From Heteronotia binoei (Eukaryota), in contig NC_083227.1 in assembly GCF_032191835.1 (NCBI RefSeq), positions 105,896,001 to 105,960,000 of the forward strand: a DNA stretch of 64,000 nt. Reading direction: 5' to 3'. Within the stretch, counting starts at the first letter, position 1. Every line of letters starts with the position of its first letter. The translations under genes and the position numbers were made by a program. Shown here piece after piece: positions 26,450-58,474 of this stretch. Under the pieces are notes generated by a model. That model did no database searches. It was given only the letters and a program-made list of their open reading frames with translations, and was not told the origin of the DNA.

Positions 26450-27560
26450 GAATAGCAATCGAGCAAACAAAAAATTTTAAATACTTGGGGATCACTTTTA
26501 ACCACAAGTTAAGCTGGGTTTCACATCGTAACAACACCATCAACTTGGCTAAGTGTTCAGCTGCTCAAATTAAACAGTTTTTCTTTGCAAAGGGCAACCA
26601 ATTAGTTCCAGCAGCTATTAAAGTATTCAAAGCCAAAACGCTTGCCCAAATCCTCTATGGTATCCCTATATGGATCTCAGCTTTTACCAGGAAAGTGGAG
26701 GGCATTCAAGCCTCATTCTTTAGACAAATTCTTGGTTTGCCAAAATGTGTGTCCTACTTTGCTCTCTGCTCTGAAGTGGGTCAGTCTTTGGTGGAGACAA
26801 AAGCCTGGATTGCAGTGTTTAAATTCTGGCTCAAAATTCATTTTAGAACAGATCCCAACAGCCTTCTTGATTGTATGAAAAGAGACCCATATATTTCGTC
26901 CTGGACAGCAGTGCTTCTGTCTAAACTCAATCAATTGGGGTTAGAGGTAGATGATTTTTCTACCTCTGAAGAGTCATATATCTTCAGATGTATTAAACTG
27001 AGACTGTGGGAATTGGAGGAAACGAAATTACGGCCAACTCTCCCTTATATTTGCTCTCCAGCTTCCTTAGGTCTTTATGCTTTTTGTGGCAAAATGCCCA
27101 ATTATCTATCAGACCTAACCACTCCAAGTCATCGCAGGGCATTTATGTTGGCCAGACTAAACGCGTTTCCCTCCAAAGTTTTACAAGGGAGATATCAGCG
27201 AGTCCCTTTAGCCGACAGACTTTGCTCCTGTGGAGCGAATACCCCTGACTCAATCCAGCATATATTGCTTGATTGTTCTTTTTACCATAACCTCCGTAAA
27301 GATTTATTTGGCAAGCTTTCTTTTTCTCCAGATTTGTCTATTCTGCCACCCTGTTATTATTTATTGAGTGATACTGAGGGGGTGGTTAGTGAGGCTGTGG
27401 CAAAATTTCTGGCTGACATCCTTAAATTTAATTCTGAGCATGTTTGAATGTATCTGTAAGCTCGGTTTTATTTTGATTTTATCTCCAATGTTTAAATTTT
27501 TATATTCTGTGTATTTTTATCTGAATCTATTATGCCATTAAAGGTTTGGTATGGTATGGT
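26450..27560 (+). mobile_element. 5'-truncated young non-LTR retrotransposon (RTE-X-like; RT thumb plus C-terminal CCHC zinc knuckle)
   Basis: IEQTKNFKYLGI, KAKTLAQILYG, IQASFFRQILGLP, RLCSCG...HILLDC; 332 uninterrupted codons to TGA at 27445-27447; (GGTAT)n tail; 7-bp TSD AATATTG (26443-26449, 27561-27567). Clade assignment is tentative. Confidence 0.85.
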
Positions 27561-29612: not shown

Positions 29613-29748
29613 ATGATCAGCTTGATTTTCTGCAGATGCTGCTGCTTGGCAACCAACAAAGCCCTAGCAGTTGGGCTTGTTCTGCTGGCTGTTGAGAACT
29701 GTACTACCTTGAAGCAGGGAGTTCCCCGTCTCCGCCTCTCATATAAAG
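29613..29748 (+). CDS. SEMA3D-like coding exon 1 (signal peptide; [11 protein letters not shown]...VPRLRLSYK)
   Basis: ATG at 29613 with an in-frame upstream TAA at 29532; hydrophobic [11 protein letters not shown]; PRLRLSYK motif; donor G|GTAGGA, phase 1. A candidate acceptor TTTTTAG ends at 29527. Confidence 0.88.
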
Positions 29749-41700: not shown

Positions 41701-44700
41701 TAGGTCTCTGCAGATCCATACACACAGTCCAGAGCACCAGTCACCACAAGCACAATGCAGAAAGATGCTTAGAAGAAAAATAATTTGTGTATGAGACTGG
41801 GTTGTGATTAAACTTAGAAGCCAGAATTGTTGGGATGCTTTTGCTTTACAGGGCAGGATGGTCCCTTTATGTAAGAATGGTGTTTCTGTTTGACTGATGT
41901 TTCTGGCATGGCTTATGCTTGAACTAAAAATTTCTCCTTTGGTTTTCTGCAGAAACCAGGGATTCCAGCTATGCAATTGGTGACTCACTCAATTGAATCT
42001 GGGAGAGGCAAATGCCCCTACAGCCCCCATGAGCCTTTCACGGGGCTGCTCATTGGTAAGAAGGAGGGCAAACAGACTAGTGAGAGAAATCTAGACAATG
42101 CAGTGGTAGAAACATTAAAAAAAGGAATCCAGCAGATGTTACCAGCTTTGCTTCCAGCAAAGGCTTCTAGAATCTGTATCCTGGTGACTATCCATGTACC
42201 TGTGGATTTTGCTGCCGTAATCTTTCCTCGTTGTGACTCCTTTATGCCAGGAAAAACTTCATCTATTGAATTTCTGCTGATTTAAAAAAAAATGCAGGGG
42301 GGAGAGATAGCAACCATATATGCCTTCCTTAGCCAGTATCTTTTCCCTCACTAAATTGTGTGTGAGGGAGCAAGAGACATCCTTTAAAATCCAAAGGAAA
42401 GAAAAGGAAAGGTCCCGTGTGCAAGCACCAGTTGTTTCCAACTCTGGGGTGACGTCGCTCTCACAACGTTTTCATGGCAGACTTTTCAAAACACAGATAC
42501 AAATTTTCTTTCAATATATCCTTTTGTTTGGTTATCACAGATGGGGAGTTTTATTCAGGTGCATCTGTTGACTTCATGGGAAGCAATGCTGCATTCTTCC
42601 GCACATGGCTTGATAGGTCTGACCAGAACTACATCCGGACAGAACAGAACCATGATAATTGGTTAAATGGTAAGTGGGTTATGTTGGTGGTGGAATAGTC
42701 TGCTAAGAAAGTGGTTCCCATAGGTGGTGGTAGACCTGCCATTGTCCTATATTGAACTTTTCAGATGTAACATCGATAGGGTTAGAATCCGAAGAAATTT
42801 GGTGCAAGCTTCCACCCAGAAGACTCCAGATAACAGTAACTGGGTCCTTTAGAAAGCAGCACTTCACCACTGGTGCCTCAGTTATAGCTATAAAGGGCCT
42901 AGGTACATGTTCTGGAGCAGGTCACGGTGGAAGGTTAACTGAGTTTTAGGAGGAGGAAACAGATTATGAACTTCCACGCCATACACTAATGAGTTTAGTT
43001 TAGTTATCCTAAATCACAAAAGGACTGATGATGTCTCTTAACCATTATAGATTTTTCTCCTGAATGAGCTTTAATGGCTTTAGGGAACTACCACCATCCC
43101 TGTTGGCTGAAGAGAAAGGACAGATGTATGCTTCTGTGAAAAGGGAGTGCAGTTTGGATGCTGGAAGAGACAGAGGCGTTCACGTTGTGAACCACCTAGA
43201 CCATTTTTCATTTTTTTATAGACTTCTCTGAGATTGAAATAGCACCCAATACTGTTTATTTTTTTAATTATTCTGTAATTTTATATGTTTATGATTGAGG
43301 TTTATATCGTTACTGGTTTTTATTGACTTTTATTAAATGTAAGCCGCCTTGAGCCTGTTTCAGCAGGGAGAGCGGAATATAAACTGAAAAATAAATAAAT
43401 AAAAATAGTCCTTTTTGTTTCAGAGATATACCTACACACTTCAGCTGTGATCTTTCCAAAAAGATTGTACCAAGCCAGGTTTGGGAAATATTGGAGTGCT
43501 CTCTTCTTCACTCTCTGGGATAATGTGGGATAGTAGATCTGCTGTCTCATAGGACTCCCTCTTTGCCTCCACACATGTTCTACTTATACAATTGTATTTA
43601 TATCAGATACTACAAATAAGCCTTCAGTGTTCTTTCCTCCAGTCAGTAAAAATGAATTCACCAGCTGGATAAGGAAGCTACACCAGACACTCATTCCTCC
43701 GTGGAGTCTGGCACAGTAGCTTATTACTGTTCTAGTTTCCCCATGCTGCAAGTAGCAGTTCTTGCAAGATTATAAGCTTTTTCTAGCCAGCAACAGCCCA
43801 TAACATTCCTATCTTTTTTATAGCAGCACCATTTTATATAGCACTATGATGACAATAATCTGTGCTCTTTATGATCAAGACCACTGGAAGGGGGTAAAAG
43901 ACTCTGAATAATCTGCTCTGCCAACATGTTGATTTGTGCCTAAATTTCCCTCTTCACAGAACCTGTGTTTATTGGTGCTTTTGCCATTCCTGACACCTAC
44001 AACCGTGATGATGACAAAGTGTACTTCTTTTTTCGAGAAACTGCCGTAGAAGCTGGACAGTGGGAGAAAAGACGCATCCATGCCCGGGTTGCTCGGGTCT
44101 GCAAGGTCAGCTATAGCAGCCACTTGAAGGTGCCAACTCAGGCTCTGCTTAGCCTATAGACATTGTTGGCTGAACTGCTCTGAATATTTAGCCTTAGCAT
44201 CTGCAAGGACTGTACTATTAACAGTGTGGGGCTTATCTAGGACTGCAGATGAGAGGCTGCCAGCAAAAGCCTGTGAGGAGAGTACATTAAAAGGTGTATT
44301 TACCTTTTCTATGGTTTCTCCATACAGGTTAAGTCCCATCTTTCTCTACCTTAGAACATGGGGACCATCTGAGATGAGCAGTTATTCCCAAGACTGAATA
44401 GTGTACGCTGACAACCAATCTGTAGTTTATGATCCATTTTTGGGAATGTGTCCATGTGAACTCATTGGGGTTTACTTCTAAATAAACATGCATGGAAACA
44501 TGCCTGAATGAAAGAAGGTGAAAATTGCCGGGGGGGGGGGGTGATCTAGGATCTGAGAAGATTTGGGTTTGTACTCCACTTTTCTCTGCCCTAAGGCATC
44601 TCAGTGGCTTACAGTCACCTTCTCTTCCTCTCCTCATAACAGGCACCTTGTGAGGTAGGTGGGGCTGAGAGAGTTCTGAGAAAATTGTGACTGGCCATCC

Positions 44701-47700
44701 CTGCTCTGTTACAGAAGTTTGAAGGGTGACACAATCACTTACTAATGTATTTAACAGCCTCATAGGGATGCTGTGAGGATAAAATTGAGGAGAGGAGAAG
44801 GACATAAGGAACTTTGTGTCACTTTGGGGGAGAAAGGTGGGGTATAAATAAAGTAAGTAAATAAATAAACCTACCATTTCCCAGAGCAGTTGTCAAAAAA
44901 GGATAGACAGTCCTGACTTTCTGCTAATGCTTCACTGGAGGTGCTGTTTCTAAAGTCAGGAGTCAGTATGACAGTGTGGTTTGTGTGGTTCTAGGACTGG
45001 GGGAGACCTAGGTTCAAATCCCTATTTGGCTATGAAGCTCACTCAGTAACCCTGGAACTGTCAATCTCTCCTAACCTTCCTCACAAAGGAGAATGAAAAT
45101 ATGGAGGAACCATGCCTTGGAGAAGTGATGGAATAAAAATGTAGACGGTAGATAGATTTGCATTGGTAGAGAACCTGATGTGACCCTTACAGAACTGCTC
45201 TCAGTCAGAGCTCTACACAAAGAGGCCATGAGGGACATTAAGATGTCTTCTTACTCCTTTGTGGTTGGCAGAATGATGTTGGTGGAAGGTACAGCCTTAT
45301 CAACCGTTGGAGTACATTCCTAAAAGCCCGGCTAGTTTGTTCAATCCCAGGTCTGCAGGGCACTGCAACTCACTTTGATCAACTGGGTAAGTTTGCGTTA
45401 TTTCATATTCTTTGCTGGGGCACTACAGCCTATAACTGCACTGCCCATAATCTCTTCTCCACCATAACTAGTATTGTGTAGATTCTCTGACTGCACTGCA
45501 CAAATGTGGCAATTGGCTCAGTATTCAGCAACATTTATAAAAGCAACCTGTAGCTGTAATAAAGGAAGTCAGTTACAAGCTTGGTAGATAACCATGGAAG
45601 CAATATGTGATCAAAACGTGGCAGCAGAAGGCTGAGCAAGATTTTCAGTGGTAAGTAGTAAAGTAGTATGTGGGGCATCAGAGCCCACAGATCTTGTTAC
45701 CCCTCAATGTCAGAAGCAGAATAAATTATGTAAAACAAGCTTGCTTAGTTTGCATAATTTATGTAGGTTGCAGAATTTCATCTCTCCTAATACATAATTT
45801 TATTTTTTTTTTGCAATGGAGCAGATCTATTATTCTGATTGTAATCTTGCAATTGCCCCTGTTCTCCATTCCCTGCACACCCTAGCTTTACCTGTAGCTG
45901 CTGAAGAACCTGCAGAGCTGGAGATGTTGGTTCTGGAACTGTCAGTCAAAGGTCACATGTACAGGTGAAAAACTTGACAAATGGTCTCCCTTCCTGAGGA
46001 GCTAAGTATCTATGATTGTCCTAGCTGTCTGAGCGGATTATCTTGTGTTTTTGTTTTATCCCCTGCAGAAGATGTTTTTCTCCTTCACACCCGCAATTTG
46101 CAGAACCCTCTAGTTTATGGCCTTTTCACAGTATCCAGGTTAGTAGAAATATGAACAACGCACACAATGAAGGAAGTTAGATAATTGCTTTTGCATTGGT
46201 CCGCTGTGCTTCTGTATGACGGAGTGTATGACAACATATCATTTTATAGAGTGTGCTTGTGCCTCACATAGGTGTAGATGGAACAGTTGTCTTGTGCAGT
46301 AGGTACTGTGGCACTGATTGGAAGATCTGAGCAGGGGTCCTGTACAGTTGCTCTATACAGCTGAACAGATTTGGTGAAGTGGGGGTGGGGGTGGGAATAC
46401 ATTTGGAGCTAAATTTTTGTGCAGTCAGGTAGATGAGACTTAATAAGAAGATAAAAATCAATATAAAATGACAATGAGTGCTGCCCCCTCCTCTGTCATT
46501 TTTCCTTCCTTCCTTTGTGTTACAGCATTAATAAAAGTTTTGTACTGGTTGGCCAGTTCCTGGTAGCAGGAGAAAGCACTGTTTGTGTTCCATGTTCCAA
46601 AGCACTGTTTATGTGTTCCAAGACACAATGATAATGAAGCTATTTAAGGAATGTAAAAATGCTGGTTTGTGTTTAACAATTGCAAGATCATCTAGGCGTT
46701 TGGGGATCGAGGTCCATGAATAAAAATGAATTTAGGCTCCTCTGTGCACATTTTTAGTCTCTCTTCTAATCTTTATGAAAGTTACTGGGCCTACCATAAC
46801 ACAGACATGTCCTTTGTGCTGATTTATGGATCTGTAGCATTAGTAGAAGATGTTTTTAGGGTTTGCCAGTCAGTGTGCCCCTGTCCTTTTCTTTCCTAGT
46901 GGCATTTTTAGTGGCTCTGCTGTGTGTGTCTATTCCTTGGCAGCCATTCGGGCTGCTTTCAATGGGCCCTTTGCACATAAGGAAGGCTTGGACTATCAGT
47001 GGGTGGAATACAAGGGAAGGATCCCCTATCCTCGTCCAGGAACAGTACGTATGTAAAACACAAAGTCCAAATTCTCAGTTAACCTTTTCTCTGTCTGCTG
47101 CACAGACACATAGACAATGGTTACTGTAACCCACAATTCAGCCATACTGTGAATGAGACATGACAATTATTTATGACAATACAAGGAGGGGAGGAATTGC
47201 TGGAGGGGTGAACAGTTTGGAAACTTTACAGTTATACTGCATTACCTGCCTACCTAGAGAGCCCTTCAAGTCTGTGGAGGCTCCAACCATGCCTGATGGT
47301 GGCCTGCTAGTGCTGCTTTTGTGATTGATACATGGACCAGCCACTTTACTATTAGCCATAGTGATGATTAAGTACAGATAAAACTAAAGTAATGTCAGAG
47401 CAATGCCAAAGGGGTCATGGCTCAGTGATAGAGCATCTGCTCAGCATGCAGAACGACCCAACTTCAATCCCCTGCATCTCCAGCTAGAAGAGTGATGTAA
47501 AAGGGTATGCCAGTCTCCACAGCAGGAGGGGGAATTGGTAAAAATCCCCCCGCCTCTTCCTTCCCTAGCAGAAATTATTTTTCACTGGTGAAAAATAAGT
47601 ATTGCCTCCAGGCCTATGCAAGAACATTGTAAAAGCTCCCAAATGCCTCCCCTCAGTTCCCTCATATAGGGAGACTGCAAACGTTCACCATTGTCTGTGG

Positions 47701-50700
47701 GATGTGTGTTCCCATACACAGCAAGAGAAGCTGTCCCCTCATTCTTGCCTTCTGGAATGGCCTGCTGAGATCCTGAATCCTCTCTGTATGCAGAAAAACA
47801 AAAATGTATTAGATTCAACATTTAAGCAGTATATTCCACAGTATATGCCAGCCTGTTACTGCAGTTGAAGCAAACTGTGAGATAGTGGTATCATGGAAAA
47901 AACTAAAGGCACAAGAGAAGTTGTTACTGTGTTGTATTTTAATGTTGTGCCTTACACATCCATAGGCAACAGCGTACAAAAACCTAGACCACAAATTGAT
48001 TAGTTTTTGTCATCTTCCTACTACAAAATGGCAAGATTGTTTCTTGTGGAATTGAATGTTCACACACTTACAGTTTTTAACATCTTCATTCTCTGTCAGT
48101 GTCCCAGTGCAACGTACGACCCACTCGTCCAGTCAACAAAAGACTTTCCTGATGAAGTTATCAGTTTCATGCGTACCCATCACCTGATGTGGGATCCGGT
48201 TTATCCACTCCACTGGAAACCTGTTCTGATGAGAGTCAATGTGCCTTTCCAAATCAAGCAGCTCGTAGTGGACAGGGTGGAGACAGCATCTGGACATGTT
48301 GATGTCCTTTTCCTTGGAACAGGTAGAGAGGTCCTAAGCAACAGTGCCTCACAGTCCTTGTTACATACTGCATTTTAAAAATACCCCACCCTTTTCAGAT
48401 TCTGCATTCCAGCTCAGCAAACTAAAGAAGGTGAGGATAGGTATACTGTCCGAACTCCACTGATGAAAAATAAGTATTACCTATTGGAAGCAAGTGTGAT
48501 GTAAGAGCTAGAGTGCAGGACTAGGACCTGGCTTCAAATTTCTACTCAAGCCATCAAGCTTAGTTTCTCTCAGCCTGATCTAGATGATGATGATAGTGGA
48601 AAATCCTGCATACTATCCCAAGCTACATAGAGGAAAAGTCAGGAAAACATGCACTACATATATAGCTATTGCATTGTGTTCCAAAGGAAAGTGATAGTGG
48701 CACTCAGTAGAATCTAAGATTCCAACAGGCCAAGAAATTTGGGATGCCTTCCACTGGATGAACTCTGTGCTATAACTTAGCTGACATACAAGGAAGGGAG
48801 TCCTGCTGAATTCTAAGTTCTTGGTTCTAGGAATGGTCTTCTTCTAAGTTAACTCGGTTTTAGGAATGATCTGGAAGGAGGGAGGGTTTGTTCATCCTTG
48901 TAACCAAGTTTCAGTTGGTAATCGATACACTGGGATTTAGGGCACATCTAGACTCAATATAGGCATGACCCAACTTGGTTCATGCGGAAGCCCCATAAAC
49001 TGTTGATAGTGGCAGGGCGTTTAAAGTACAACTTGGATGGATCAATGGATGGGAGGAACTTGACCCTTCTCCTGAAATGCTTTTGCTTCAGCTGTTTTCC
49101 TCCTTATGGGATGGGTTATATGGGATAGACTTCCTGCTGAGGAGCAATTTTCCAGCCAAGCATGCTGTGTTTTACACAACCCCCCCCCCCACATCTTTAT
49201 AGGGAATCATTTGCAACTCTGTTCTGAAATGTGATTGTGACACTATCATGTCTGGTTTGGCCTTGGGTTCTACTCCAGCAGCATGAAGTATCTGTATGCT
49301 TCCATGCTATTGGTTCTTGCTATTGCTTATTAACACCAGTAGAACTAAAGGAGTTGTTTGTTTGAAAGGTCATTTTGTAAGTGAAGCACGCATCCAGCTA
49401 ATAAAAATCAGCTTCTCTAAAGAGAATTTAAGATCCTGAAATATAAATACAAAATTATATATACAAAATGTACAGCAGGTTTCCATTTGGCTAGAAGTCA
49501 CTGGAAAAATCAGCTCAGTTCTTTGCAGCTATCAAAACAGCGTTAGCGACTCTTAGCACAAAAATGAAACATTAACAAAGAAAAATATCATAATAGTGCT
49601 GCATAAATATTCTTCATAAGTCCACATCTTGGTCTCAGCATGCAGTTCTTCCAATCATCCCCTCTCAGGAAAGAGATATCACAGCAGGAAAATGTGTGGA
49701 AAGGAACAACACGATGATTATGGAATAACTTCTACATGAGGCTGTTCCAGATAGGAAAAAATTACACAGATGTTTGCTCAGCAGTGCTGAACTCCTGAAT
49801 GTTAAAGTGTTTGTACTGATTTTTGAAAATTTCTCATTCATGCTTTAGAGAATGAGAGGTTGCAGATGCCCAGAGCTTCAATAATTGTTTTAGACAAGGG
49901 AAACATCTTAATTCCAAACCTATATAAGGAGTTATCGAGGCAGACTTGGAGCCAAGGTGGGGTGTGTATGTGGGGTGGGGGAGAGAATGGCAGAGGGAGT
50001 GGAGATAACAGTGAAAGCTTTCCACTCCTGTGGCTTGTGTTTCAGTGTAGAAAAAAAGCTAGCAGTTCCCTAAGATGGAGTTGCTACCTTACCACTTCAG
50101 TTTAACAGCACTCAAGGTAGACAATTGTAGAGCATGTAGATAAGCACTATCTGAAGAAGCACCCAATGAAACAACAAGCTGGAGTTGAACTCAACAACAT
50201 GGCTCCCTAGTTCTTAGGTGGGATTACACAATCCACACATATGAAATAAATGAAAATAACCCTGTTGCCACTGCCTTGTATTAATAAAACTCTGGAAACA
50301 TGCCCAATCTTCTGAATTTTACATACATATATTCTGGCAACTGGCCCTGAAGCTGAGGAGGCATCCGGGCTGTTCTTGATTTTTTTTGGCAGGCCTATTC
50401 CTGGTAGTGTTTTGGCACAACAAACCCTTGACCTAGCTGCAAACAGAATGGGAATCAACACTGTTCCCATCTGTTTTATTCAGTTTGCCTGACCCTTGCC
50501 AACCACTCCATTTGGAGCAGCACCTGAAAACAGCCAACTCTAGTAGGCCATGGGCATCTTTCCATCAAAACTGAGAGCTGTTTCATCTAGTCCTCAGGTC
50601 AAGCAATGGCCCTCTGCATTATGGAATGAGAGGAAAGCCATTGCTGGGTTCCAGATTGCAAACATATATGCCTGCAGCCTGAAAAAGAATGCAAAGACCC

Positions 50701-53700
50701 AAGAACTTGTTTGCGTCAGAACACAGAGTGTTATGCTCACAAGGTTTTTAGGCCTCTGCAGCAGAGAAAGACTGATCTATAGGAGATGGATGTATTCTTT
50801 TGGCAACTGGTTTGTATACTGAGCAGTGTCTGACAGTGACATCTTTTAGAAGTGGCTTACTGGATTGAGATAGCCAGTGGCTTTCATACACCATGAAAAT
50901 AATTATATTCAGTTGGAAGTGACAGTCTTTTTCTCCTGACATGTCCTTACCTTTTGCTTTTTCTCCAGATGAAGGCAAAGTGCTGAAGGTGGGCATTGCC
51001 AGCATGAGAGGCCAAGACCCTCAGGAGATTAGCTTGGAAGAGATCAGTATTTCAAAGGTACCTTACTTGTCTGCTTTACCTTTTTGTGGCTATGGCTCAA
51101 TTGAGGAAGCCTCACTGACAAATCATGCCTGTTGAAAACAGCTGCCTTGTCTCTTGGCTCATCTTCATTTGTTAGGATGCTGTTCAATTGGTGCAGCGGA
51201 TCCTTCCCCACCTGGAATCCTGCTGTAGGGCAATAATCCCCACAATCTTCCCTTATAGCCAAGCTTGTTGACGAAGTTCCATGGGGCTCCACCCTGCTCC
51301 CCATGCCTTTCGCTCTCTCCCTAAAGCCCTTAAGACAAGTCAATTGTAGCTTTGAGGATGGCTGTCCTCAATATGCTTATGACCCCAGCTCTGTATCTCC
51401 TTATCTAAATCTCTGGTGATACAGTGGAGATCCTGAGCCACTGTCTGTCTGTCTGCAGTGGTTAAATGGCTAAGAGTGAACAAACTGAAACTGAATCCTG
51501 AGAGACAAAGGTAATGCTGGTTGAGAAGCCTGAGATCTTGAAGGACATTGTGCTTCCCACTTTTGATGGGATTCAGCTGGCTCTTGCTGACATAGTGAAG
51601 AGACTCGGAGCTATATCGGTGGAGCAGTACTGCTAGAGAAGCAAGTTAACACAGCTGTGAAAAATGCTTTCTTCCAATTCAGTTTGCCTGGAAAGTGGCT
51701 GATCTGGTCTCCTGGATCCATGCCACAGTAACATCAAGACTGGACTATTGTAATGTACTCTACAGGGGCCTGCCCTTGAAGTCAGCTTGGAAACTCCAGT
51801 TGGTATAGAATGCTGCAAGCTGGTTACTATTGGGAGCTACTCAGAGTAGGCATTACATCCATTCTGCAGTCTCTCCATTGGCTGCCCACCAGTTACCAAG
51901 CTCAGTTCAAGTGATGACTATCACATACAAGGCACTTCGCGGCCTAGGACCCTCTGATCTGCAACACCACCTCTCCTCCTACCTGCCCTGACAGTTTTGT
52001 TCATCCAAGCAGGGTCCTTCTGGGGATGCCACCCTACAGCTAGGCAAGATTACCATCTGCTTGTACACACTCTGCGTTCTGTTGTTGCCTCCATTTTCTG
52101 GTATTGTCTGCTGAGAAGACCAGGGAGACACCCATATAGGGTTGCCAATTCTGGATCAGGAAATTCTTGAAAGTTTTGAGGGTGCAGCTCAGTGGGGTAT
52201 AATGCCATAGAGTCCACCATCCAGTCAGCCATTTTTCTTCAAGGGAGCTGTAGTCTGGAGGTGAGTTATAATTCCAGGACATTTTTAGGCCCAACTGGAG
52301 GCTGGTAATCCTAACTCAATGGGCCCCCTTAATCATTTTGAAAACTGCTAAGCAGCCCTGATGTGGATAGCCCAGGCAAGCCCAATCTCATCAGATCTCC
52401 AAAGCTAAGCAGGGCTGGCCCTGGCAAGTACTTGGATGGGAGACCTCCAAGGAATACCAGGGCTGGGATGCAGAGGCAAGCCATGGCAAGATGGCTCTCT
52501 GAACATTCAAGCCCCAGTAGGGGTCACCAGAAGTCAATTATGACTTCCAGGCGCACATCCAAGATACCAAAGAAAACTGCTAAGCTATGCAAGTATTAAA
52601 ACTGTATTTAAATTAGATTTTGTTAAGCACACAAAGGTCTATGCTAAGGTACCCTTCTGGGTTTTTTGCAGATGCCTTTGGCCATTCTAGACATGCAGCT
52701 CTCTCTAAAGAGGGTAAGTCTGTATTTGTGAATTTCTCAGTAACATTTTGCTAGAGCTGTTACTTCTACAACAGGGGCAAGTCAACCTCAACACTTCGGA
52801 AGTAAAAACAAGTTAAAGTTTGAGGCTTCTGTACCATCGTGAACTTAGAAGAATTTGGCACTTCAGGTGACTTCTTAGTGGAAAGGGAAACAAAACTTGA
52901 TGTCTCTTGCTATTTTTGGTTCTGTGAGCAGCAGGAGATGTTTGTGACCACCACAAAGGGCTTAGTCCAGCTCTCCCTGTACCGCTGTGAACTCTATGGT
53001 AAAACCTGCATAGGCTGCTGTCTTGGCAGAGATCCCTACTGCACCTGGGATGGCAAGTCCTGCCGGCCCCTCCTGCATACTAAAAAAAGGTGAGGCTGTG
53101 ACCTATTCCATTAGAAAAGTGCCTTTACTCTTCCCAGTATATTCAATTCATGTGTTGGAACACTGTCTTTATATGATAATATTTCCACATTGCCGCAAAA
53201 TTAAACAGGAGGCCAGTGGCTTTTCTGAGTCAGAGCCTGCTTCATCAGATGCATGAAGTGTACATACGTAAGGCAAACAGATAGAGCTACAGACAACAGA
53301 AAGAGGAAAGGGTAGATGTTACTCCTCAAGCTCAGTTTGAAAATATCCAATCAAAAAAGTGGGAACCATTCTGATCTGTGCTATCTTAATTGGATTTGCT
53401 TTATCACATCCCACCATGTCCTTTCCTGGAGTATTTTATTTAAAAGATTTATATATGCTCTTTTCTCCAAAGCATTTCGAGTCTTAAGACTGGTGTCAGG
53501 ACGTAAGTCTACTGCTCCTTGTCCCTAGAACAATACCCTGGCATATGGGTCCTTGAGGTTAAATGCACACAGATAAAGCGCGCGCACACACACACAGAGG
53601 TTTCTTCAAAGATTTGAAAAGATATCACTACGCAGTAGTCTCTATAGCTTAGCAACAGAGAAAATAAAAAAGCTAACTGTTCTATCTAATACATGGATAA

Positions 53701-56700
53701 AGGTAAAGGTAGTCCCTTGTGCAAGCACCAGTTGTTTCTGACTCTGGGGTGATGACGTTTTCACAGCAGACTTTTTTTACGGGGTGGTTTGCCATTGCCT
53801 TCCCCAGTCATTACTTTTCCCCAGCAAGCTGGGTACTCATTTTACTGACATCGGAAGGATGGAAGGCTGAGTCAACTTTGAGCCGACTACCTGAAGCCAG
53901 CTTCCACCAGAATCAAACTCAGGTCATGAGCAGAGAGCTCGGATTGCAGTACTGCAGCTTTACCACTCTGTGCCACGGGGCATGGATACCTGGTATTAGA
54001 TGGCATATCTTTTTGCAGTACAAGAATCCAACCTGTAGTATAAGAATATTCTATATGTTGCAGTCTCTTTTCAAAGATTTAAAAAGATATCACTTCACAG
54101 TACAGTCAGCAATGAAGACCTGCAAATTTAGGGGGAGGTATTTGTGAGTTTTCTGCATTGTGCAGGGGGTTGGACTAGATGACCCTGGAGGTCCCTTCCA
54201 ACTCTGTGATTCTATGATGAAGCACATCATATCAAAGTATACTAGCGTGGCATGGGGTTCTCCTATACCTTTATTATTGCTTTTTGCCCGCTGACATCAG
54301 GTGGTCCTTTGGATCCAATCAGAAATCTCTCGATGGAACTTTCCTGAGGACTTCAATGTCTGCTCCTAATCCCTTCCTGCCATCTGATTAAACAGATGAG
54401 CACAGGTTTTTGTGATTAACCAATTACCACATGCCTGAGTCCAGCCTGGTTTGACTGGGTCAGTCACAGTGCTTGAAAGAGCTGCTCTCTCAAGAGCAGT
54501 TCTCAAGAGTTCTCTCAGCCCCATCTACCTCACAAGGTGTCTGTTGTGGGGAGCGGAAGGGAAAGACGATCGTAAACCATGCTGAGACTCCAAGTGAACA
54601 GGGTACAAATCCAATCTCTTCTCTTCTTCTTGAAAGAGATAAAGATGGTAGCTGCAGGAAGGCTCAAATCACAAACACCTACAAGCTGGACTATGTCCTG
54701 TAGTAATCACTAACTCTTGAGGGAAGTTAAGGTGCTCTGCATCACAAGCGGTAATGAGAGTTTAAAAGCAATTGAATAAAACAAAAATTAAATCAGCCAT
54801 AAAAATGTTAAATCTGGTGTTAATCCCACTTTATATATCTAACAACCATTAGGATTGCTTTTCTGTTGTTTGTAGCTAATTATAACTATATCTGCCTAGT
54901 GGGTTTATACTTCATGCATCTGATGAAATGACCGTTTCATGAAAGCTTATACTGGAATAAATGTGGTTAATCTTTAAGGTGCCACTGGATTCCTGTTTTA
55001 TTGATACATGAATGTGAATTGGATGTGTATTTTACACTGGCAGTCTGTAGCGCAGGGCCTGTTCTTCATACCTTTTAGATCAGTATGTGGGCAGCTCTCC
55101 TTGCTGCTTTTCCTACAAGGCTCTGCTCAGGTGCTTCTGTCCCAGATCCTTTCCTACCACCATTCCTGCTGGACCAGGGACATGTAGGACATTGGCCATT
55201 AGCTTTCAGTTACATCATTGGGAAACAATGATGCAGCAAGCCCAGGCTTGCTCCCTTTCATTGAATTATTACCAGATGACTGTGGGGAAAGGAGAACTCC
55301 TATGTCTCGCTGACAGGATAATGGAAGCAACTGTTTGGGTCTGTAAGCATGAGGTGGCCCCTTACATGCATTCCACTTCCCTGCCAAGTGCTGAGATGCA
55401 CTGTCCTTACATTGACATTCTTCTCCTGTTCATTCCCATCATGGTCTTGGCCCACCAGCACCCTTGAGCTAATCAGTATAGAAGAAACTGTATTGCAGAA
55501 GAGGTTGCAGAAGAAACTGGGTTTAGTCTCTGAACTGTCTTCCTTGCAGGCAAGCACAATGCCAAGATTTGTTAAAAGCCAACCCAATCAGACTATGCCA
55601 AGATCCTACAAAGGGTGAGTCATGGGACATCCACTGGGCACGACTATAAATAAACTATTTCAATGTAAGGAAAGAAAACTACATCCAGCTGGTTTAACTG
55701 GAGAAAACCTCAAAGATTATTTAAATCCAGCCCTTTGCACTGAAGGAGGTTTTAGAGCACCCAAGCTCATCCCTTGCCAGAAGTTGATACAGCTTCCTCT
55801 CTATTTCTCACAGCTGCTAGGGGTGATTAGCCCACAGAACACTGGCTTAAGTGGCGAAGACTTAAACACAGATTTGGAAAGCGACCACCTGGGAAGTGAA
55901 ATCTATCTTGTTTAAAGTGCACATTGATTTACATTGATGTTTGCAGTTGACAGGGCTATTCGTATTAATCCAGCCACAGCTATACAAAAGATGGATAAAT
56001 AGAGGTGCTCACCTGAGTTTCCATAAACACTTGTCAGCTCTGCATTTAGCCATGGATATTAATGTAAACCCCACCATTAATTCAGATCTGCAGCTTTCTG
56101 TAGCTGAGACTGAGGTTTCTTTACACAAGGCACCTGATATTACCCTAACAGGGCAGCTGCATGGGTAGGTTATGGACATCCATATCTCCTAATGATAATT
56201 TCCATATCTGCCTTGCTAAATTGCCTTCTGGCAGGAATCACCCACCTCTGTATTCTGTGCTCTCTAAACAAGGACATTTCTTCTCCTTCAAAGTAGTAAT
56301 TGTTCAAATACAATTTAACTGGTATACAAATGTATTCGGATTAATTTTCTGCTGAACATTGTGCAAAATGGTAGACATACCGTATTTTTCGCACCATAAG
56401 ATGCACTTCCCCCCCAAAAAAAGTGGGGGGGAAAGTGTGTGCGTCTTATGGAATGAAGGTATGTACCTTCCTCCGGGGGGGGGATCTGCTGCCTCCGCCT
56501 CTGATCCCGGCGCTTCCCCCGCGCCTGCCTGCCTGGCTCCAGCTCTGATGCTTACAGCAAGCGCCAGGATCGCTCCCTCCGCCCTCCGATCCCAGCGCTC
56601 GCTTTAAGCACCAGAGCTGAAGCCAGGCAGACAGGCACGGAGAAAGCACGCTGCCCCCTCCACAGCCGGCGCTCGCGAAGCGCTGGGTTTGCGGAGGGGG

Positions 56701-58474
56701 TGGGTGCTTCCTCCGTGCCTGTCTGCCTGGCTTCAGCTGATGCTTAAAGCAAGCGCTGGGATTGGAGGGCAGAGGGAGCGATCCTGGCGCTTGCTGTAAG
56801 CATCAGCTGAAGCCAGGCAGACAGGCACGGAGGAAGCACCCGCCCCCTCCGCAAACCCAGCGCTTCGCGAGCGCCGGCTGTGGAGGGGGCGGCGTGCTTC
56901 CCCCGTGCCTGCGTGCTTGGCTGGGAGACAAGCGGCGAGATCGCTCCCTCCGCCCCCATTACAAACCCAGCACTTCGCAGGGAGCGATCTCGCCGCTTGT
57001 CTCCCAGCCAGGCACGCAGGGAGACAAGCGGCGAGATCGTCTCCCCGCGCCTGCATGCCTGGCTGGGAGACAAGCGGCGAGATCGCTCCCTGCGAAGTGC
57101 TGGGTTTGCGGTGGAGGCGGAGAGAGCGATCTTGCTGCTTGTCTCCCAGCCAGGCACCTGCGTCTAATGCTCCGGAGCGTCTAATGGACCGAAAAATACG
57201 GTAACTCTTTGGGGTAGTGATACTGAAGTTCAGTGATGACAGGCAAGCAAGCAGCAGGGTTTCCCGTGTCCACCAGCAACCAAGGACAGCTACTAATGGT
57301 TTAAGAAAGGAACATACAATTCTTTCTACACAGGTGTTTAAAGTCAACAGTGCGTGGTGCAGGTGCCCACATAGCTAGAACTCAGGAAGGCATCTCATGG
57401 CCTCACTTCCTCAGAGGTGATGGGGTCAGTTTTTTGAAAATGACAGTCAGTGGTTTTCTCTTCCTTACAGGCAGGCATTGAATAAATTTGAGTCCTGACA
57501 CCAATAGTGGGAAAGGAAGTTGAAAAATTCTGATTGTTGTGTATATATATCACAAGAGTGCCCATTATCATTGGACTCTGTGAGCCAAAACTTGTGACAT
57601 CAGGGCTTAAATCCTCCACTGTAAACATTAAAAAAGCAGAGCGCAGGGTGGATTTGGATGGAGTTTTCATGGTTGAGTATATTCCAAAGGAGTTAAATGC
57701 TTTAGTTTTTTCTATCCATTCTGGCCAAACACCATGTCTCTGTTCCTTTCATGCAGGGATTTCACTAGCTGAAGAAAAGGTGATATTTGGGGTGCAGAAC
57801 AACTCAACATTTCTTGAGTGCCTTCCATCTTCCCCACAGACAACAATTCGCTGGCTTGTACAGCGCAGCAATACAGCGATCCTGGAAGAGGTAATGTGGG
57901 TGGGAAGCTAAAGGAAAGGTGTTTTTTTTTATAAACTGTGGGATTCCTGAGTAATGGAAGGAAGAAACAGCAACATTAAGAGAGGACAAGTATGAAGGAA
58001 AGGGAAACTCCTCTATCTTGTCTCTGGCTAAAGAGGCCATGGTTTTGTTCCCTGCAGGTTGGGAGCACTGGCCGCTTTTCAATCCTGGAGCAAGGACTGC
58101 TGATCAGCCAGCTGACACAGGAAGACGCTGGGATCTACCACTGTCAAGGAATGGAGCAGTCCTTTTCCCAAACTCTTATCCACTATGGCCTTCATGTAAT
58201 TGGGAATCAGGCTATGGAAGTTTTAATCTCCAGGACTAGCAAAAATACAGAAACAGCAGCAAGCCACCATAGTATCATCCCCTTGGCAGAGACGCAGCTT
58301 CCTCACAAGAGCTACTCAAGGGCTTTGGGTGCATTCAGCTCCAATTTGGATGAGTTCTGCAATGCTCTCCAGCAGAGGAGAAGGGGGAGGCAGAAAGACT
58401 GGAACCGGAAGTGGCAAAGGCATCACCAGGAAAGCAAGAGAGGAAGAGTGAGGAGGAAGCCTGGGCCTCCATAG
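29613..58474 (+). CDS. SEMA3D-like: Class 3 semaphorin, semaphorin-3D-like (17 coding exons, 771 aa; signal peptide-Sema-PSI-Ig-basic tail)
   Basis: Exons assembled by hand. All 16 introns are GT-AG with matching phases. Exon lengths 136,161,63,120,103,129,146,115,70,145,223,89,42,158,65,134,417 sum to 2316 nt, open to TAG at 58472-58474. Motifs [101 protein letters not shown] identify class 3; TLKQ.VPRL, TYDPLV.ST.DFPD and AEEKVIFG are SEMA3D-like. Paralog versus ortholog needs a phylogeny. Confidence 0.93.
30624..30827. mobile_element. Short TAGGGTTGCCA-family hAT MITE
   Basis: Degenerate TIRs; TSD TGGTAAAC/TTCTAAAC (6/8). Confidence 0.7.
31207..31425. mobile_element. Short TAGGGTTGCCA-family hAT MITE
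   Basis: TIRs; perfect TSD CACCTTCA. Confidence 0.88.
33320..33500 (-). mobile_element. tRNA-derived SINE with LINE-like tail
   Basis: Minus-strand TGGCTCAGTGGTAGAGCATCTGC...GGTTCAG head; a similar head lies at 47412-47500 (+). Confidence 0.6.
35418..35605. mobile_element. Short TAGGGTTGCCA-family MITE
   Basis: TAGGGTTGCCAA...CCAACCCTA; homologous to 31207 in reverse orientation. Confidence 0.7.
35664..36443. mobile_element. Longest (780 bp) TAGGGTTGCCAA-family hAT MITE
   Basis: TIRs; perfect TSD CTTCAAGG; contains both left-end modules seen separately in other copies. Confidence 0.9.
36755..36935 (-). mobile_element. 5S rRNA-derived SINE
   Basis: Minus-strand TTAGTACTTGGATGGGAGACTACCAAGGAA, 5S box C-like. 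Confidence 0.7.
37236..37396 (+). CDS. SEMA3D-like exon 2 (DLLRLNSS...NEEPQK)
   Basis: ttgcag|AT, AAG|gtcagt; 161 nt; [19 protein letters not shown]. Confidence 0.93.
37606..37668 (+). CDS. SEMA3D-like exon 3 ([21 protein letters not shown])
   Basis: ttccag|ATT, GAG|gtaaag; 63 nt; IxWPA..C..AGK motif. Confidence 0.93.
37820..37986. mobile_element. Short TAGGGTTGCCA-family MITE (degenerate)
   Basis: TAGGGTTACCA...TTGGCAACC. Confidence 0.65.
37999..38482 (-). mobile_element. Solo LTR
   Basis: Perfect 8-bp terminal inverted repeat TGTCAGGC...GCCTGACA; TSD GTAGG/GTAGA (4/5); minus-strand AATAAA near 38064. Confidence 0.75.
38493..38792 (+). mobile_element. Full-length Squam3 SINE
   Basis: Pol III A/B box head, CORE-like body, (CAT)n tail. 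Confidence 0.85.
38924..39381 (+). mobile_element. Solo LTR
   Basis: TGTCAAGC...GCTTGACA; perfect 5-bp TSD AAAAT; AATAAA near 39322; homologous to 17797-18321. Confidence 0.82.
39449..39614. mobile_element. CAGGGCTTTT-TIR MITE
   Basis: CAGGGCTTTT...AAAAGCCCTG; no TSD found. Confidence 0.6.
39620..39795 (-). mobile_element. Degraded 5S-derived SINE
   Basis: Minus-strand TCAGATCTCAAAAGCTAAGCAG...AAGGAATACCAGG. Confidence 0.55.
40017..40304 (-). mobile_element. Full-length Squam3 SINE with (TTC)n tail
   Basis: Reverse complement of the 38493 copy. Confidence 0.87.
40488..41357 (+). repeat. 51-bp direct repeat pair (40488-40538, 41307-41357) flanking exon 4
   Basis: GGCTAAACTACCTCAGATTCTGCTACACCTAAA(A/G)CTGTAATGTTGATGCAA, 50/51 identical. 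Confidence 0.92.
40619..40738 (+). CDS. SEMA3D-like exon 4 ([10 protein letters not shown]...KERAE)
   Basis: tgctag|ATG, GAG|gtgagt; 120 nt; ECANFIR, ACGTG. Confidence 0.95.
41953..42055 (+). CDS. SEMA3D-like exon 5 (KPGIPAMQL...[11 protein letters not shown]...LLI)
   Basis: ctgcag|AAA, G|gtaaga; 103 nt. Confidence 0.93.
42408..42485 (-). mobile_element. Sauria/Squam1 SINE 3' fragment
   Basis: GTGCAAGCACCAGTTGTTTCCAACTCTGGGGTGACG matches the 23471 and 53699 copies. Confidence 0.7.
42541..42669 (+). CDS. SEMA3D-like exon 6 ([14 protein letters not shown]...DNWLN)
   Basis: tcacag|AT, G|gtaagt; 129 nt. Confidence 0.95.
43250..43405 (+). mobile_element. L2 LINE 3' end
   Basis: TGTAAGCCGCCTTGAGCC...GGGAGAGCGGAATATAAA...(AATA)n. 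Confidence 0.65.
43960..44105 (+). CDS. SEMA3D-like exon 7 (EPVFIGA...[11 protein letters not shown]...RVARVCK)
   Basis: tcacag|AA, AAG|gtcagc; 146 nt. Confidence 0.95.
44555..44870. mobile_element. Squam3/CORE SINE fragments in opposite orientations
   Basis: Match the Squam3 3' region. Confidence 0.6.
45272..45386 (+). CDS. SEMA3D-like exon 8 ([27 protein letters not shown]...FDQL)
   Basis: tggcag|AAT, G|gtaagt; 115 nt. Confidence 0.96.
46069..46138 (+). CDS. SEMA3D-like exon 9 (EDVFLL...[11 protein letters not shown])
   Basis: ctgcag|AA, AG|gttagt; 70 nt. Confidence 0.94.
46900..47044 (+). CDS. SEMA3D-like exon 10 ([12 protein letters not shown]...PYPRPGT)
   Basis: tcctag|T, ACA|gtacgt; 145 nt. 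Confidence 0.96.
48100..48322 (+). CDS. SEMA3D-like exon 11 (CPSATYDP...VLFLGT)
   Basis: tgtcag|TGT, G|gtagag; 223 nt. Confidence 0.96.
50969..51057 (+). CDS. SEMA3D-like exon 12 (DEGKVLKV...LEEISISK)
   Basis: ctccag|AT, AAG|gtacct; 89 nt. Confidence 0.92.
51345..52060 (+). mobile_element. Degraded L2 LINE RT/3' fragment
   Basis: YAYDPSS (YADD-like), [25 protein letters not shown]...KLQLV motifs. Confidence 0.75.
52137..52313. mobile_element. Short TAGGGTTGCCA-family MITE
   Basis: TAGGGTTGCCAA...CTGGTAATCCTA. Confidence 0.7.
52364..52560 (+). mobile_element. 5S rRNA-derived SINE
   Basis: CAGATCTCCAAAGCTAAGCAGGG...AGTACTTGGATGGGAGACC...GGAATACC followed by a non-5S tail. Confidence 0.78.
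52672..52713 (+). CDS. SEMA3D-like exon 13 ([14 protein letters not shown])
   Basis: ttgcag|ATG, AGG|gtaagt; 42 nt, the short exon typical of class 3 semaphorins. Confidence 0.92.
52932..53089 (+). CDS. SEMA3D-like exon 14 (PSI domain; QEMFV...[16 protein letters not shown]...HTKK)
   Basis: gagcag|CAG, AG|gtgagg; 158 nt; tandem NAG acceptors make the exact start uncertain by +/-3 nt. Confidence 0.93.
53699..53980 (-). mobile_element. Sauria/Squam1-type SINE
   Basis: (ACCTTT)n tail and conserved body. Confidence 0.87.
54916..54952 (+). ncRNA. Minimal hammerhead ribozyme motif in a Penelope terminal fragment (54905-54995), sense strand of intron 14
   Basis: GCAU-CUGAUGA-A-AUGA-ccguu-UCAU-GAA-AGCU-U-AUAC; core intact, one mismatch in stem I. 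Confidence 0.5.
55550..55614 (+). CDS. SEMA3D-like exon 15 ([22 protein letters not shown])
   Basis: ttgcag|G, G|gtgagt; 65 nt, phase 2/1 as required; QD..K..P...C aligns to QDVKYGDPITQC of SEMA3D. Confidence 0.9.
56380..57201. mobile_element. Non-autonomous Tc1/mariner-superfamily element (Tc2/Kanga/MER104-like TIR) with CpG-rich palindromic interior
   Basis: TA|CCGTATTTTTCG...CGAAAAATACGG|TA; TA TSD. Confidence 0.88.
57757..57890 (+). CDS. SEMA3D-like exon 16 (Ig domain start; [22 protein letters not shown]...LEE)
   Basis: atgcag|GG, GAG|gtaatg; 134 nt. Confidence 0.94.
58058..58474 (+). CDS. SEMA3D-like exon 17 (Ig end and basic tail; ...DAGIYHC...DEFC...[11 protein letters not shown])
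   Basis: ctgcag|GTT; open to TAG at 58472-58474. Confidence 0.94.
   Translation, partial: VGSTGRFSILEQGLLISQLTQEDAGIYHCQGMEQSFSQTLIHYGLHVIGNQAMEVLISRTSKNTETAASHHSIIPLAETQLPHKSYSRALGAFSSNLDEFCNALQQRRRGRQKDWNRKWQRHHQESKRGRVRRKPGPP

What the first reader, a model, noticed from the sequence alone, without database searches (positions are those of the whole stretch)
53079..55568. Internal furin site is naturally ablated (KRRxRR-QD -> KRQAQC-QD) with a new cysteine at P1
Seen: exons 14/15 encode H-T-K-K-R567-Q-A-Q-C571-Q-D. Known: SEMA3A (KRRTRRQD) and SEMA3D (KRRARRQD) carry an R-x-R-R proprotein convertase site here. Its cleavage separates Sema-PSI from the Ig-basic tail and changes activity, and furin-resistant SEMA3 mutants have been engineered at such sites. 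Here all three motif arginines are replaced and the remaining TKKR lacks the P4 Arg. The new Cys brings the PSI-region count to eight versus seven in recalled SEMA3A/3D. Inference: a naturally cleavage-resistant, possibly disulfide-stapled, constitutively full-length class 3 semaphorin.
Basis: partly seen in the sequence, partly recalled or inferred. Interest (0 to 1): 0.8.

Follow-up and report, generated by a model that had tools for sequence, protein, structure and literature searches.

The report
Gecko semaphorin lacking its internal furin site
A gecko gene for a secreted class-3 semaphorin (a nerve- and vessel-guidance signal) has lost, in three ancient evolutionary steps, the internal cutting site that normally lets furin-type proteases switch such signals down. 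The cysteine that replaced the key arginine is fixed in all reptiles and birds, not new to this animal.

Summary
The window encodes, residue for residue, the 771-aa "semaphorin-3D-like" protein annotated in the gecko Heteronotia binoei (17 coding exons). The exon 14/15 junction reads H-T-K-K-R567-Q-A-Q-C571-Q-D, and spliced RNA reads support it.

The interpretation needs re-framing.
- The gene is not SEMA3A or SEMA3D. It is a separate, unstudied class-3 paralog, found in all reptiles and birds sampled here. It is sister to ray-finned-fish si:dkey-49n23.1.
- 118 of 120 fish orthologs keep a canonical site (92 read KRRARRQD).
- The cysteine at the P1 position is invariant in 143 of 143 informative reptile and bird sequences, so it is old.
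- The arginines were lost stepwise: KRRARC in birds, crocodilians and turtles; KKRRAQC in most squamates; KKRQAQC in all six gecko species sampled.
- The gecko protein has no R-x-[K/R]-R, R-x-x-R or K/R-x-x-R motif in this loop. It keeps both C-terminal tail sites (RRRGR744, RVRR766).
- The gene is under purifying selection (dN/dS 0.14-0.26).

The protein is therefore predicted to resist internal furin cleavage while still being trimmed at its tail. Actual resistance and the partner of Cys571 are untested. This is a new variant of a known kind, of moderate interest.

The parts
29613..58474 (+). Complete coding region (17 coding exons plus the TAG stop) of the class-3 semaphorin gene 'semaphorin-3D-like', 771 aa. 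Exons: 29613-29748, 37236-37396, 37606-37668, 40619-40738, 41953-42055, 42541-42669, 43960-44105, 45272-45386, 46069-46138, 46900-47044, 48100-48322, 50969-51057, 52672-52713, 52932-53089, 55550-55614, 57757-57890, 58058-58471.
   Evidence: Exact spliced mapping of P0270 onto the window, with GT-AG junctions. Pfam finds a Sema domain (E 9.8e-55) and Ig hits below Pfam's curated cut-offs. The PSI exon matches Sema3A chains in the PDB at E 6e-16.
52932..53089 (+). Exon 14: end of the Sema domain and the PSI cysteine knot (C533, C540, C543, C544, C551, C558). It ends ...R-P-L-L-H-T-K-K plus the first two bases (AG) of R567.
53090..55549 (+). Intron 14 (2460 nt, GT..AG). It carries interspersed-repeat copies and no alternative coding exon for an RxRR-QD peptide.
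   Evidence: RNA joint 53089>55550; regex scan of three-frame translations.
55550..55614 (+). Exon 15 (65 nt): third base of R567, then Q568 A569 Q570 C571 Q572 D573 ... C583 Q D P T K. This is the former site-1 proprotein-convertase motif plus the last PSI cysteine.
   Evidence: The exon has the same 65-nt size in Gekko, Eublepharis and Lacerta.
55560..55562 (+). Codon TGC = Cys571. It occupies the position of the P1 arginine (R555 of Sema3A) of the canonical KRRxRR|QD site.
   Evidence: It is invariant in 143/143 informative reptile and bird orthologs, 0/120 in fish orthologs and 0/24 in other class-3 sequences, including 11 fish orthologs.
55596..55598 (+). [quoted passage not shown] It is a candidate partner of Cys571.
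   Evidence: The pairing is inference only.
58358..58360 (+). Cys734, equivalent to the interchain-disulfide cysteine (C723) of Sema3A.
   Evidence: Conserved column. Its role is taken from PMC8155012.
58376..58456 (+). C-terminal basic tail with the two retained proprotein-convertase motifs: R740-R-R-G-R744 and R763-V-R-R766|K. These correspond to the 731-735 and 758-761 sites of Sema3A.
   Evidence: Motif scan: RVRR766 is the only R-x-[K/R]-R in the whole protein. Translation check. R763 and R765 are at least 90% conserved in alignment A1.

Best explanation
The window holds the Heteronotia binoei ortholog of an unnamed, ancient class-3 semaphorin paralog. NCBI calls it 'semaphorin-3D-like'. 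It is sister to ray-finned-fish si:dkey-49n23.1, and the two together are sister to true SEMA3D.

The ancestral protein carried the usual inter-domain proprotein-convertase site 1, K-R-R-x-R-R|Q-D, in the last loop of the PSI domain. That site was taken apart in three steps:
1. The P1 Arg became Cys before the last common ancestor of living reptiles and birds, and has been fixed since.
2. The P2 Arg became Gln in stem squamates.
3. The P4 Arg became Gln in stem geckos, and independently in Varanus.

The gecko loop T-K-K-R-Q-A-Q-C therefore matches no furin consensus, whether strict, minimal or degenerate. The two basic sites in the C-terminal tail are intact.

Predicted mechanism (inferred, not shown): the protein is secreted as a covalent Sema-PSI-Ig-tail dimer linked through Cys734. 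Furin-type convertases cannot convert it into the monomeric, low-activity ~65-kDa Sema-PSI form. They can still trim the tail to expose a C-terminal arginine for the neuropilin b1 pocket.

Cys571 is under strong constraint, so it is most likely disulfide-bonded. Its partner is unknown.
For: Identity of the gene
- All 771 residues of P0270 map exactly onto the window.
- The reptile-and-bird clade and the fish clade each have strong support, and the fork joining them has SH-aLRT 100. That pair is sister to SEMA3D with support 99.

State of site 1
- Fish orthologs: 92 of 120 read KRRARRQD, 118 of 120 are canonical, and none has the Cys.
- Reptile and bird orthologs by clade: birds, turtles and crocodilians mostly read EKRRARCQD; 16 informative non-gecko squamates read KKRRAQC-type; 7 sequences from six gecko species read K[KS]RQA[QK]CQD.
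- The same gecko's SEMA3F keeps KRRSRRQD.
- In the gecko protein the only R-x-[K/R]-R is RVRR766. R-x-x-R occurs only at 280, 741 and 763.

The gene is functional
- dN/dS is 0.14-0.26 in all six pairwise comparisons of four squamate coding sequences, with identical exon structure.
- RNA reads span the exon 14/15 junction.

Background from the literature
- Site 1 (RTRR, 552-555) yields the released 65-kDa form with reduced activity, and R554A/R555A or R551A/R555A block it (bioRxiv 10.1101/851121; PMC8155012; PMC6695400).
Against: - No cleavage assay exists for any member of this paralog, so resistance is inferred from motifs alone.
- A tribasic K-K-R remains in a loop that AlphaFold2 predicts to be flexible (pLDDT below 50 for residues 564-570). 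PC1/3, PC2 or other trypsin-like proteases could cut there.
- RNA support is thin: 4 junction reads in one run, of which only about 6% was read.
- The tree lacks a named SEMA3A, and no amphibian, mammalian, lungfish or shark ortholog was recovered. The timing of the Arg-to-Cys change is bounded only between the fish-tetrapod split and the reptile-bird crown.
- The chicken and turtle motif RRAR|C still fits R-x-x-R. The Cys change alone need not have abolished processing.
Confidence: 0.7

Rival explanations
1. The decisive change was the ancient Arg-to-Cys swap, or site 1 was never used in this paralog. On this reading the squamate and gecko Arg-to-Gln changes are neutral decay of a motif that was already dead, so the gecko protein behaves like every other reptile or bird ortholog and nothing is special about this window.
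For: - The Cys is fixed in all 143 informative reptile and bird sequences.
- The same Arg-to-Gln change arose again in Varanus, and related Arg-to-Gln variants (KRQARC, RRQARC) occur in some turtles and birds such as Gopherus and Eudromia. This is as expected for weakly constrained positions.
- Two gecko species even read QAKC.
Against: - KRRAR is kept almost unchanged across about 120 bird, turtle and crocodilian sequences. That argues the basic cluster stays under constraint there, either as a shifted RRAR site or as a glycosaminoglycan or receptor contact.
- KKRRAQC and KKRQAQC are each stable within their own clades.
Confidence: 0.35
2. The loop is still a processing site. The residual K-K-R567 is cut by convertases that accept dibasic sites without a P4 Arg (PC1/3, PC2, PC5/6, PACE4) or by extracellular serine proteases. 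A p65-like form would then still be made in some tissues.
For: - K566 and R567 are at least 90% conserved across the 63 class-3 sequences in A1.
- The loop is predicted to be disordered and exposed.
- The furin motif is described as degenerate (K/R-XX-R, PMC8155012).
Against: - P4 is Thr and P6 is Leu, so neither the two-of-three basic rule at P2/P4/P6 (recalled from the furin literature, not re-read here) nor K/R-XX-R is met.
- P1' is Gln.
- Blocking Sema3A cleavage needs only R551A/R555A or R554A/R555A (PMC6695400; bioRxiv 10.1101/851121).
Confidence: 0.2
3. The reading is an artefact: a mis-assembled or mis-annotated exon 15, an allele private to this assembly, or a decaying pseudogene.
For: None found. 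RNA depth is low.
Against: - The spliced RNA reads come from an individual with different SNPs and keep QAQC.
- The same peptide and the same 158-nt and 65-nt exons occur in independently assembled gecko genomes.
- The reading frame is intact and dN/dS is about 0.2.
- No alternative RxRR-QD coding stretch lies in the flanking introns.
Confidence: 0.02

Closest known systems
SEMA3D, SEMA3A and the other named class-3 semaphorins (3A-3G)
   Same: - Same architecture: signal peptide, Sema propeller, PSI knot, Ig domain and a basic tail with an interchain Cys and tail convertase sites.
- All 19 cysteine columns that are conserved across class 3 are present.
- The best PDB matches are Sema3A chains.
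   Different: - It is a separate orthogroup, sister to SEMA3D.
- In chicken it lies in a 3p21-like neighbourhood rather than in the SEMA3A/C/D/E cluster (inference).
- Site 1 reads KKRQAQC instead of KRRxRR.
- One extra conserved cysteine, C571, is present.
Ray-finned-fish si:dkey-49n23.1 (annotated 'semaphorin-3D' or '3D-like')
   Same: It is the closest outgroup clade (SH-aLRT 100, about 50% identity) with the same domain order.
   Different: The fish proteins keep a canonical site (92 of 120 read KRRARRQD) and lack the extra Cys; 118 of 120 are canonical. The reptile-and-bird stem branch is long (0.46 changes per column).
Engineered furin-resistant class-3 semaphorins (Sema3A R551A/R555A or R554A/R555A, Sema3C R548A/R552A, UNCL-Sema3E)
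   Same: The same P1 arginine, and in geckos also P2 and P4, is replaced. The expected result is a full-length, uncleaved ligand (PMC8155012, PMC6695400, PMC6387194).
   Different: This variant is natural, hundreds of millions of years old, and uses Cys rather than Ala at P1. Its resistance has not been measured.
Canonical eight-cysteine PSI domains (plexin, MET, integrin beta)
   Same: With C571 the region reaches eight cysteines. C571 lies between the sixth and last cysteines, where the seventh cysteine lies in my recollection of the MET PSI pattern (not checked here).
   Different: The usual partner of that seventh cysteine is absent (W-D instead of W-C). The class-3-specific doublet 'CC' has no counterpart in canonical PSI domains. 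The connectivity was not determined here.

Membership tests
Class 3 (secreted) semaphorin | Sema domain followed by a PSI cysteine knot | tested here: met
   Pfam Sema, E 9.8e-55. The PSI exon matches Sema3A PDB chains at E 6e-16. All seven class-3 PSI cysteines are present.
Class 3 (secreted) semaphorin | Ig domain and a C-terminal basic tail with a conserved interchain Cys and a convertase site; no transmembrane segment | tested here: met
   Ig-family hits over residues 595-671, below Pfam's curated cut-offs. C734 is conserved. RRRGR744 and RVRR766 are present. The protein ends 5 residues after RVRR766.
Class 3 (secreted) semaphorin | Conserved R-x-[K/R]-R convertase site 1 after the Sema domain ('all class-3 semaphorins', PMC6387194) | tested here: not met
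   The loop reads TKKRQAQC, with no R-x-[K/R]-R, R-x-x-R or K/R-x-x-R between residues 500 and 739. This feature is regulatory, not structural. I still file the gene as class 3 and call it a variant.
SEMA3D orthogroup | Groups inside the SEMA3D clade | tested here: not met
   It falls in a separate clade with fish si:dkey-49n23.1. That clade is sister to the SEMA3D clade (Thamnophis, Acipenser and eel sequences), with SH-aLRT 99-100. Caveat: no named SEMA3A was in the tree.
'SEMA3D-like' / si:dkey-49n23.1 orthogroup | Monophyly with reptile and bird 3D-like and ray-finned-fish si:dkey-49n23.1 proteins | tested here: met
   SH-aLRT is 100 for the joint clade. The window row nests within geckos next to Gekko japonicus. 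The window protein is 100% identical to Heteronotia binoei XP 'semaphorin-3D-like isoform X2'.
Furin-resistant semaphorin (functional class) | No furin-dependent 65-kDa fragment on expression | not testable with these tools
   Only the motif-level prediction is available.
Disulfide-stapled PSI loop | Cys571 bonded to a defined partner | tested here: inconclusive
   No cysteine column co-arose with C571. The AlphaFold2 model gives pLDDT of about 49-55 over residues 561-590, and no coordinates were available to measure distances.

The most novel reading that the evidence does not exclude
Two linked readings are not excluded by the evidence.

First, SEMA3D-like may be the 'missing eighth' class-3 semaphorin. 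It would be the whole-genome-duplication twin of SEMA3D, sitting in the SEMA3F/3B/3G (human 3p21-type) cluster, possibly lost in mammals (no mammalian ortholog was recovered).

Second, in its reptile-and-bird form the protease switch at site 1 may have been replaced by a covalent lock. Cys571, sitting exactly at the old P1 position, would bond to the otherwise orphan last PSI cysteine (C583) or to the class-3-specific C544. The Sema-PSI and Ig-tail halves could then no longer be separated. Geckos would show the end state, with every furin determinant gone.
Probability: 0.3. Interest if true: 0.6.

Novelty: new variant of a known kind. Interest (0 to 1): 0.45.

Why it matters
Cleavage at site 1 is treated as a universal regulator of class-3 semaphorins. 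It usually inactivates them, and furin-resistant mutants are being built as anti-angiogenic and anti-tumour agents (PMC6387194).

Here a whole reptile-and-bird paralog has carried a Cys at P1, by standard divergence dates (not tested here), for roughly 300 million years. It also offers a natural graded series:
- fish: KRRARR
- birds, crocodilians and turtles: KRRARC
- lizards and snakes: KKRRAQC
- geckos: KKRQAQC

This series allows a direct test of how much each arginine contributes to processing, and of whether evolution can dispense with the switch.

The work also flags an unnamed class-3 semaphorin, absent from the mammal-based 3A-3G nomenclature, whose receptors and biology are unknown. 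The significance is moderate. The functional consequences are predicted rather than shown, and the feature belongs to the gene family in reptiles and birds, not to this genome alone.

Tried and rejected
- **Cys571 partner.** The AlphaFold2 model gives low confidence in the loop and returns no coordinates, so no partner could be assigned.
- **Literature.** Searches for the paralog under 'dkey-49n23.1', 'semaphorin-3D-like', 'sema3h', 'sema3bl' and 'collapsin-4', and for a class-3 phylogeny paper, found nothing that describes this gene. Adams et al. 1997 (PMC1326291) is not held.
- **Unnamed fragments.** The cluster look-up of short Logan fragments P0001-P0014 gave no organism names, so it did not help date the Cys.
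- **Gene neighbours.** Look-ups for gecko SEMA3F and chicken SEMA3B found no record. Linkage therefore rests on shared contig lengths and on the chicken neighbours.
- **Earlier scan notes.** Nothing had been recorded near this place, and no finding matched the search words.
- **Tandem repeats.** None were found in 53-58 kb. The 455-aa open stretch at 26080-27444 has no Pfam hit.
- **Rejected ideas.** An alternative exon that restores RxRR, in-frame skipping of exon 15 (it is 65 nt long), an assembly-private allele and a pseudogene.


Full report
**1. What is in the sequence**

Exon 14 ends CAT ACT AAA AAA AG|gtgagg at 53076-53089. Exon 15 begins ttgcag|G CAA GCA CAA TGC CAA GAT at 55550-55568.

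The exon 14 peptide is a class-3 PSI (plexin-semaphorin-integrin) domain. Its best PDB matches are Sema3A chains at E about 6e-16.

A search of 1.84 billion representative proteins with the 74-aa Sema exon at 48100-48321, followed by two word-indexed searches, led to P0270. NCBI names this protein 'semaphorin-3D-like isoform X2 [Heteronotia binoei]'. All 771 of its residues map exactly onto the window in 17 GT-AG coding exons, 29613-58471, with a TAG stop at 58472-58474.

**2. Is the junction real?**

- RNA-seq reads carrying the same species label were laid on 52600-55700.
- Run X3 gave low coverage of exons 14 and 15. Four reads with two start points join 53089 to 55550 with GT..AG ends. Among the listed joints, none other leaves exon 14 or enters exon 15.
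- The reads differ from the window at 53064 (synonymous), 55562 (TGC>TGT, still Cys) and 55594 (L582Q, the residue that three of the other five gecko species carry). They are therefore an independent individual that still encodes QAQC.
- The introns between exons 13 and 16 contain no open stretch that could supply R-x-R-R-Q-D.
- Exon 15 is 65 nt long, so skipping it would break the reading frame.
- Exons 14 and 15 have the same sizes (158 and 65 nt) in Gekko japonicus, Eublepharis macularius and Lacerta agilis.

**3. Which gene is it?**

It is not SEMA3A or SEMA3D.

The 120 best-scoring hits in each, and the 120, fall into two groups:
- a reptile-and-bird group (birds, crocodilians, turtles, squamates), mostly labelled 'semaphorin-3D-like';
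- a ray-finned-fish group labelled 'semaphorin-3D' or 'Si:dkey-49n23.1'.

A maximum-likelihood tree of 45 class-3 proteins gave these results:
- The fork joining the reptile-and-bird clade and the fish clade has SH-aLRT 100.
- The pair is sister to a SEMA3D clade (support 99).
- SEMA3F, 3G, 3B, 3C-type and 3E-type sequences lie elsewhere.
- The window row sits inside geckos next to Gekko japonicus.
- The reptile-and-bird stem is long (0.46 changes per column).
- Caveat: no named SEMA3A sequence was available for the tree.

No amphibian, mammalian, lungfish or shark ortholog was recovered. The listings were saturated by birds and teleosts, so their absence is not shown.

In chicken the gene lies on the 20.1-Mb chromosome record that also carries SEMA3B. 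It sits 5 kb downstream of an OCRE plus G-patch gene of RBM5/6 type and next to a 1473-aa SNF2 helicase gene. In four lizards it shares the chromosome-scale record with SEMA3F.

From my recollection of the human gene map (recalled, not re-checked here), this looks like the 3p21 SEMA3F/3B/3G neighbourhood. The gene may be the duplication twin of SEMA3D there. This is inference.

I found no paper on this paralog in the library searched.

**4. History of the site**

| Group | Site 1 reading | Source |
|---|---|---|
| Fish orthologs (120) | 92 read KRRARRQD; 118 are canonical [KR][KR]xxRRQ[DN]; none has the Cys | |
| Other class-3 paralogs, including this gecko's own SEMA3F (KRRSRRQD) | canonical | |
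| Birds, crocodilians, turtles | K-R-R-A-R-C-Q-D, with few variants | |
| Non-gecko squamates (16 informative) | mostly K-K-R-R-A-Q-C | |
| Geckos (7 sequences, six species) | K-[K/S]-R-Q-A-[Q/K]-C-Q-D | |
| Varanus | K-K-R-Q-A-Q-C, reached independently | |

The cysteine is present in all 143 reptile and bird sequences whose models include the exon-15-type peptide.

In Sema3A numbering (551-RRTRR-555, PMC8155012) the order of events was:
1. R555C on the reptile-and-bird stem or earlier in tetrapods.
2. R554Q on the squamate stem.
3. R552Q on the gecko stem.

R551 (gecko R567) and the preceding Lys survive.

**5. Cysteine bookkeeping**

On an alignment of 60 class-3 proteins, 19 cysteine columns are shared by nearly all paralogs:
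- nine in the Sema domain,
- seven in the PSI region,
- two in the Ig domain,
- one in the tail.

C571 is the only column that is 25/25 in the 3D-like clade and 0/24 elsewhere. No second cysteine arose with it.

The 65-kDa product of Sema3A leaves the basic C-terminal part without reduction: it is not retained on cation exchange, whereas full-length protein is (bioRxiv 10.1101/851121). From this I infer that the last PSI cysteine (gecko C583) is not bonded to the upstream knot in canonical class-3 proteins and may be an orphan. C571, twelve residues upstream in the same exon, could pair with it. The class-3-specific second Cys of the 'CC' doublet (C544), an interchain bond and a free thiol remain possible.

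The AlphaFold2 model (63-sequence alignment, mean pLDDT 73.8) gives pLDDT below 50 for residues 564-570 and 585-591 and returns no coordinates. The partner is therefore unresolved, and the loop is predicted to be flexible and exposed.

**6. What the motifs predict**

In the gecko protein:
- The only R-x-[K/R]-R is R763-V-R-R766.
- R-x-x-R occurs at 280 (inside the propeller), 741 and 763.
- Around R567 the residues are P2 Lys, P3 Lys, P4 Thr, P5 His, P6 Leu and P1' Gln.

This fails the strict motif, the minimal R-x-x-R and the degenerate K/R-x-x-R motif quoted in PMC8155012. It also fails the rule that two of P2, P4 and P6 be basic, which I recall from the furin literature and did not re-read.

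By the same rules:
- Lizard K-K-R-R|A still fits K-x-x-R.
- Bird R-R-A-R|C still fits R-x-x-R, but with an unusual Cys at P1'.

The family thus offers a graded series. Laboratories block site-1 cleavage of Sema3A and Sema3C with only two Ala substitutions that include P1 (PMC6695400, PMC8155012; R554A/R555A in bioRxiv 10.1101/851121).

The two tail sites that generate the C-terminal arginine for neuropilin are retained: RRRGR744 and RVRR766, matching Sema3A 731-735 and 758-761.

**7. Is the gene alive?**

Yes. Coding sequences from Heteronotia, Gekko, Eublepharis and Lacerta have no indels and the same 17 exons. Pairwise dN/dS is 0.14-0.26 overall and 0.13-0.55 in the short PSI-linker segment, where counts are small.

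**8. Verdict**

It is a clade-wide, conserved state.

Two points need correcting:
- The cysteine is ancient and defines the reptile-and-bird ortholog group rather than this species.
- The proper comparison is with the fish orthologs of the same paralog, not with SEMA3A or SEMA3D.

My best reading has confidence 0.7. It is a natural class-3 semaphorin resistant to furin at site 1. It should stay a full-length covalent dimer and still undergo tail processing.

A partly overlapping alternative is that the gecko-specific changes are neutral erosion after the much older Arg-to-Cys event. Residual cutting at K-K-R by other proteases cannot be excluded.

Noticed in passing
L004:1-24785 (chicken CM028493.1:2808356-2833140): The chicken ortholog is a compact 4.8-kb gene. 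It lies 5 kb downstream of an OCRE plus G-patch (RBM5/6-type) gene and beside a 1473-aa SNF2-helicase gene, on the same 20.1-Mb chromosome record as SEMA3B. This suggests the paralog belongs to the SEMA3F/3B/3G (human 3p21-like) cluster and may be the duplication twin of SEMA3D.
   Followed up: partly
P0142 (Lissotriton 'semaphorin-3A-like') and P0066 (Acipenser): A second non-mammalian class-3 clade also has a degenerate site 1 (QRRSTRD and RRRNARQ instead of KRRxRRQD). The 'universally conserved' internal site may be a mammal-centred generalisation.
   Followed up: no
P0284 (Varanus komodoensis 3D-like): Varanus reads KKRQAQCHN. This is the same Arg-to-Gln change as in geckos but arose independently, since its relative Elgaria keeps KKRRAQC.
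   Followed up: no
window 53640-54263 and 54472-54575 (intron 14): Interspersed-repeat copies draw very high multi-copy RNA depth, with many mismatches and loose ends, in all four runs. These are transcripts of repeat families from elsewhere, not evidence of an exon here.
   Followed up: partly
window 55594 (codon 582): The window reads CTA (Leu582) but all 5 RNA reads read CAA (Gln), the residue that Eublepharis, Sphaerodactylus and Gekko japonicus carry. This is a polymorphism or a lineage difference within the Heteronotia binoei complex.
   Followed up: no
window 26080-27444 (+): A 455-aa open stretch lies in the 5' intron and upstream region and has no Pfam hit. It is possibly the remnant of a transposable-element ORF.
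   Followed up: partly
window 56400-57200 (intron 15): A GC-rich stretch is open in several frames on both strands and shows repeated peptide-like units (for example ...RQDRSLRP...ACLPA...). Tandem Repeats Finder reported nothing at default settings.
   Followed up: partly
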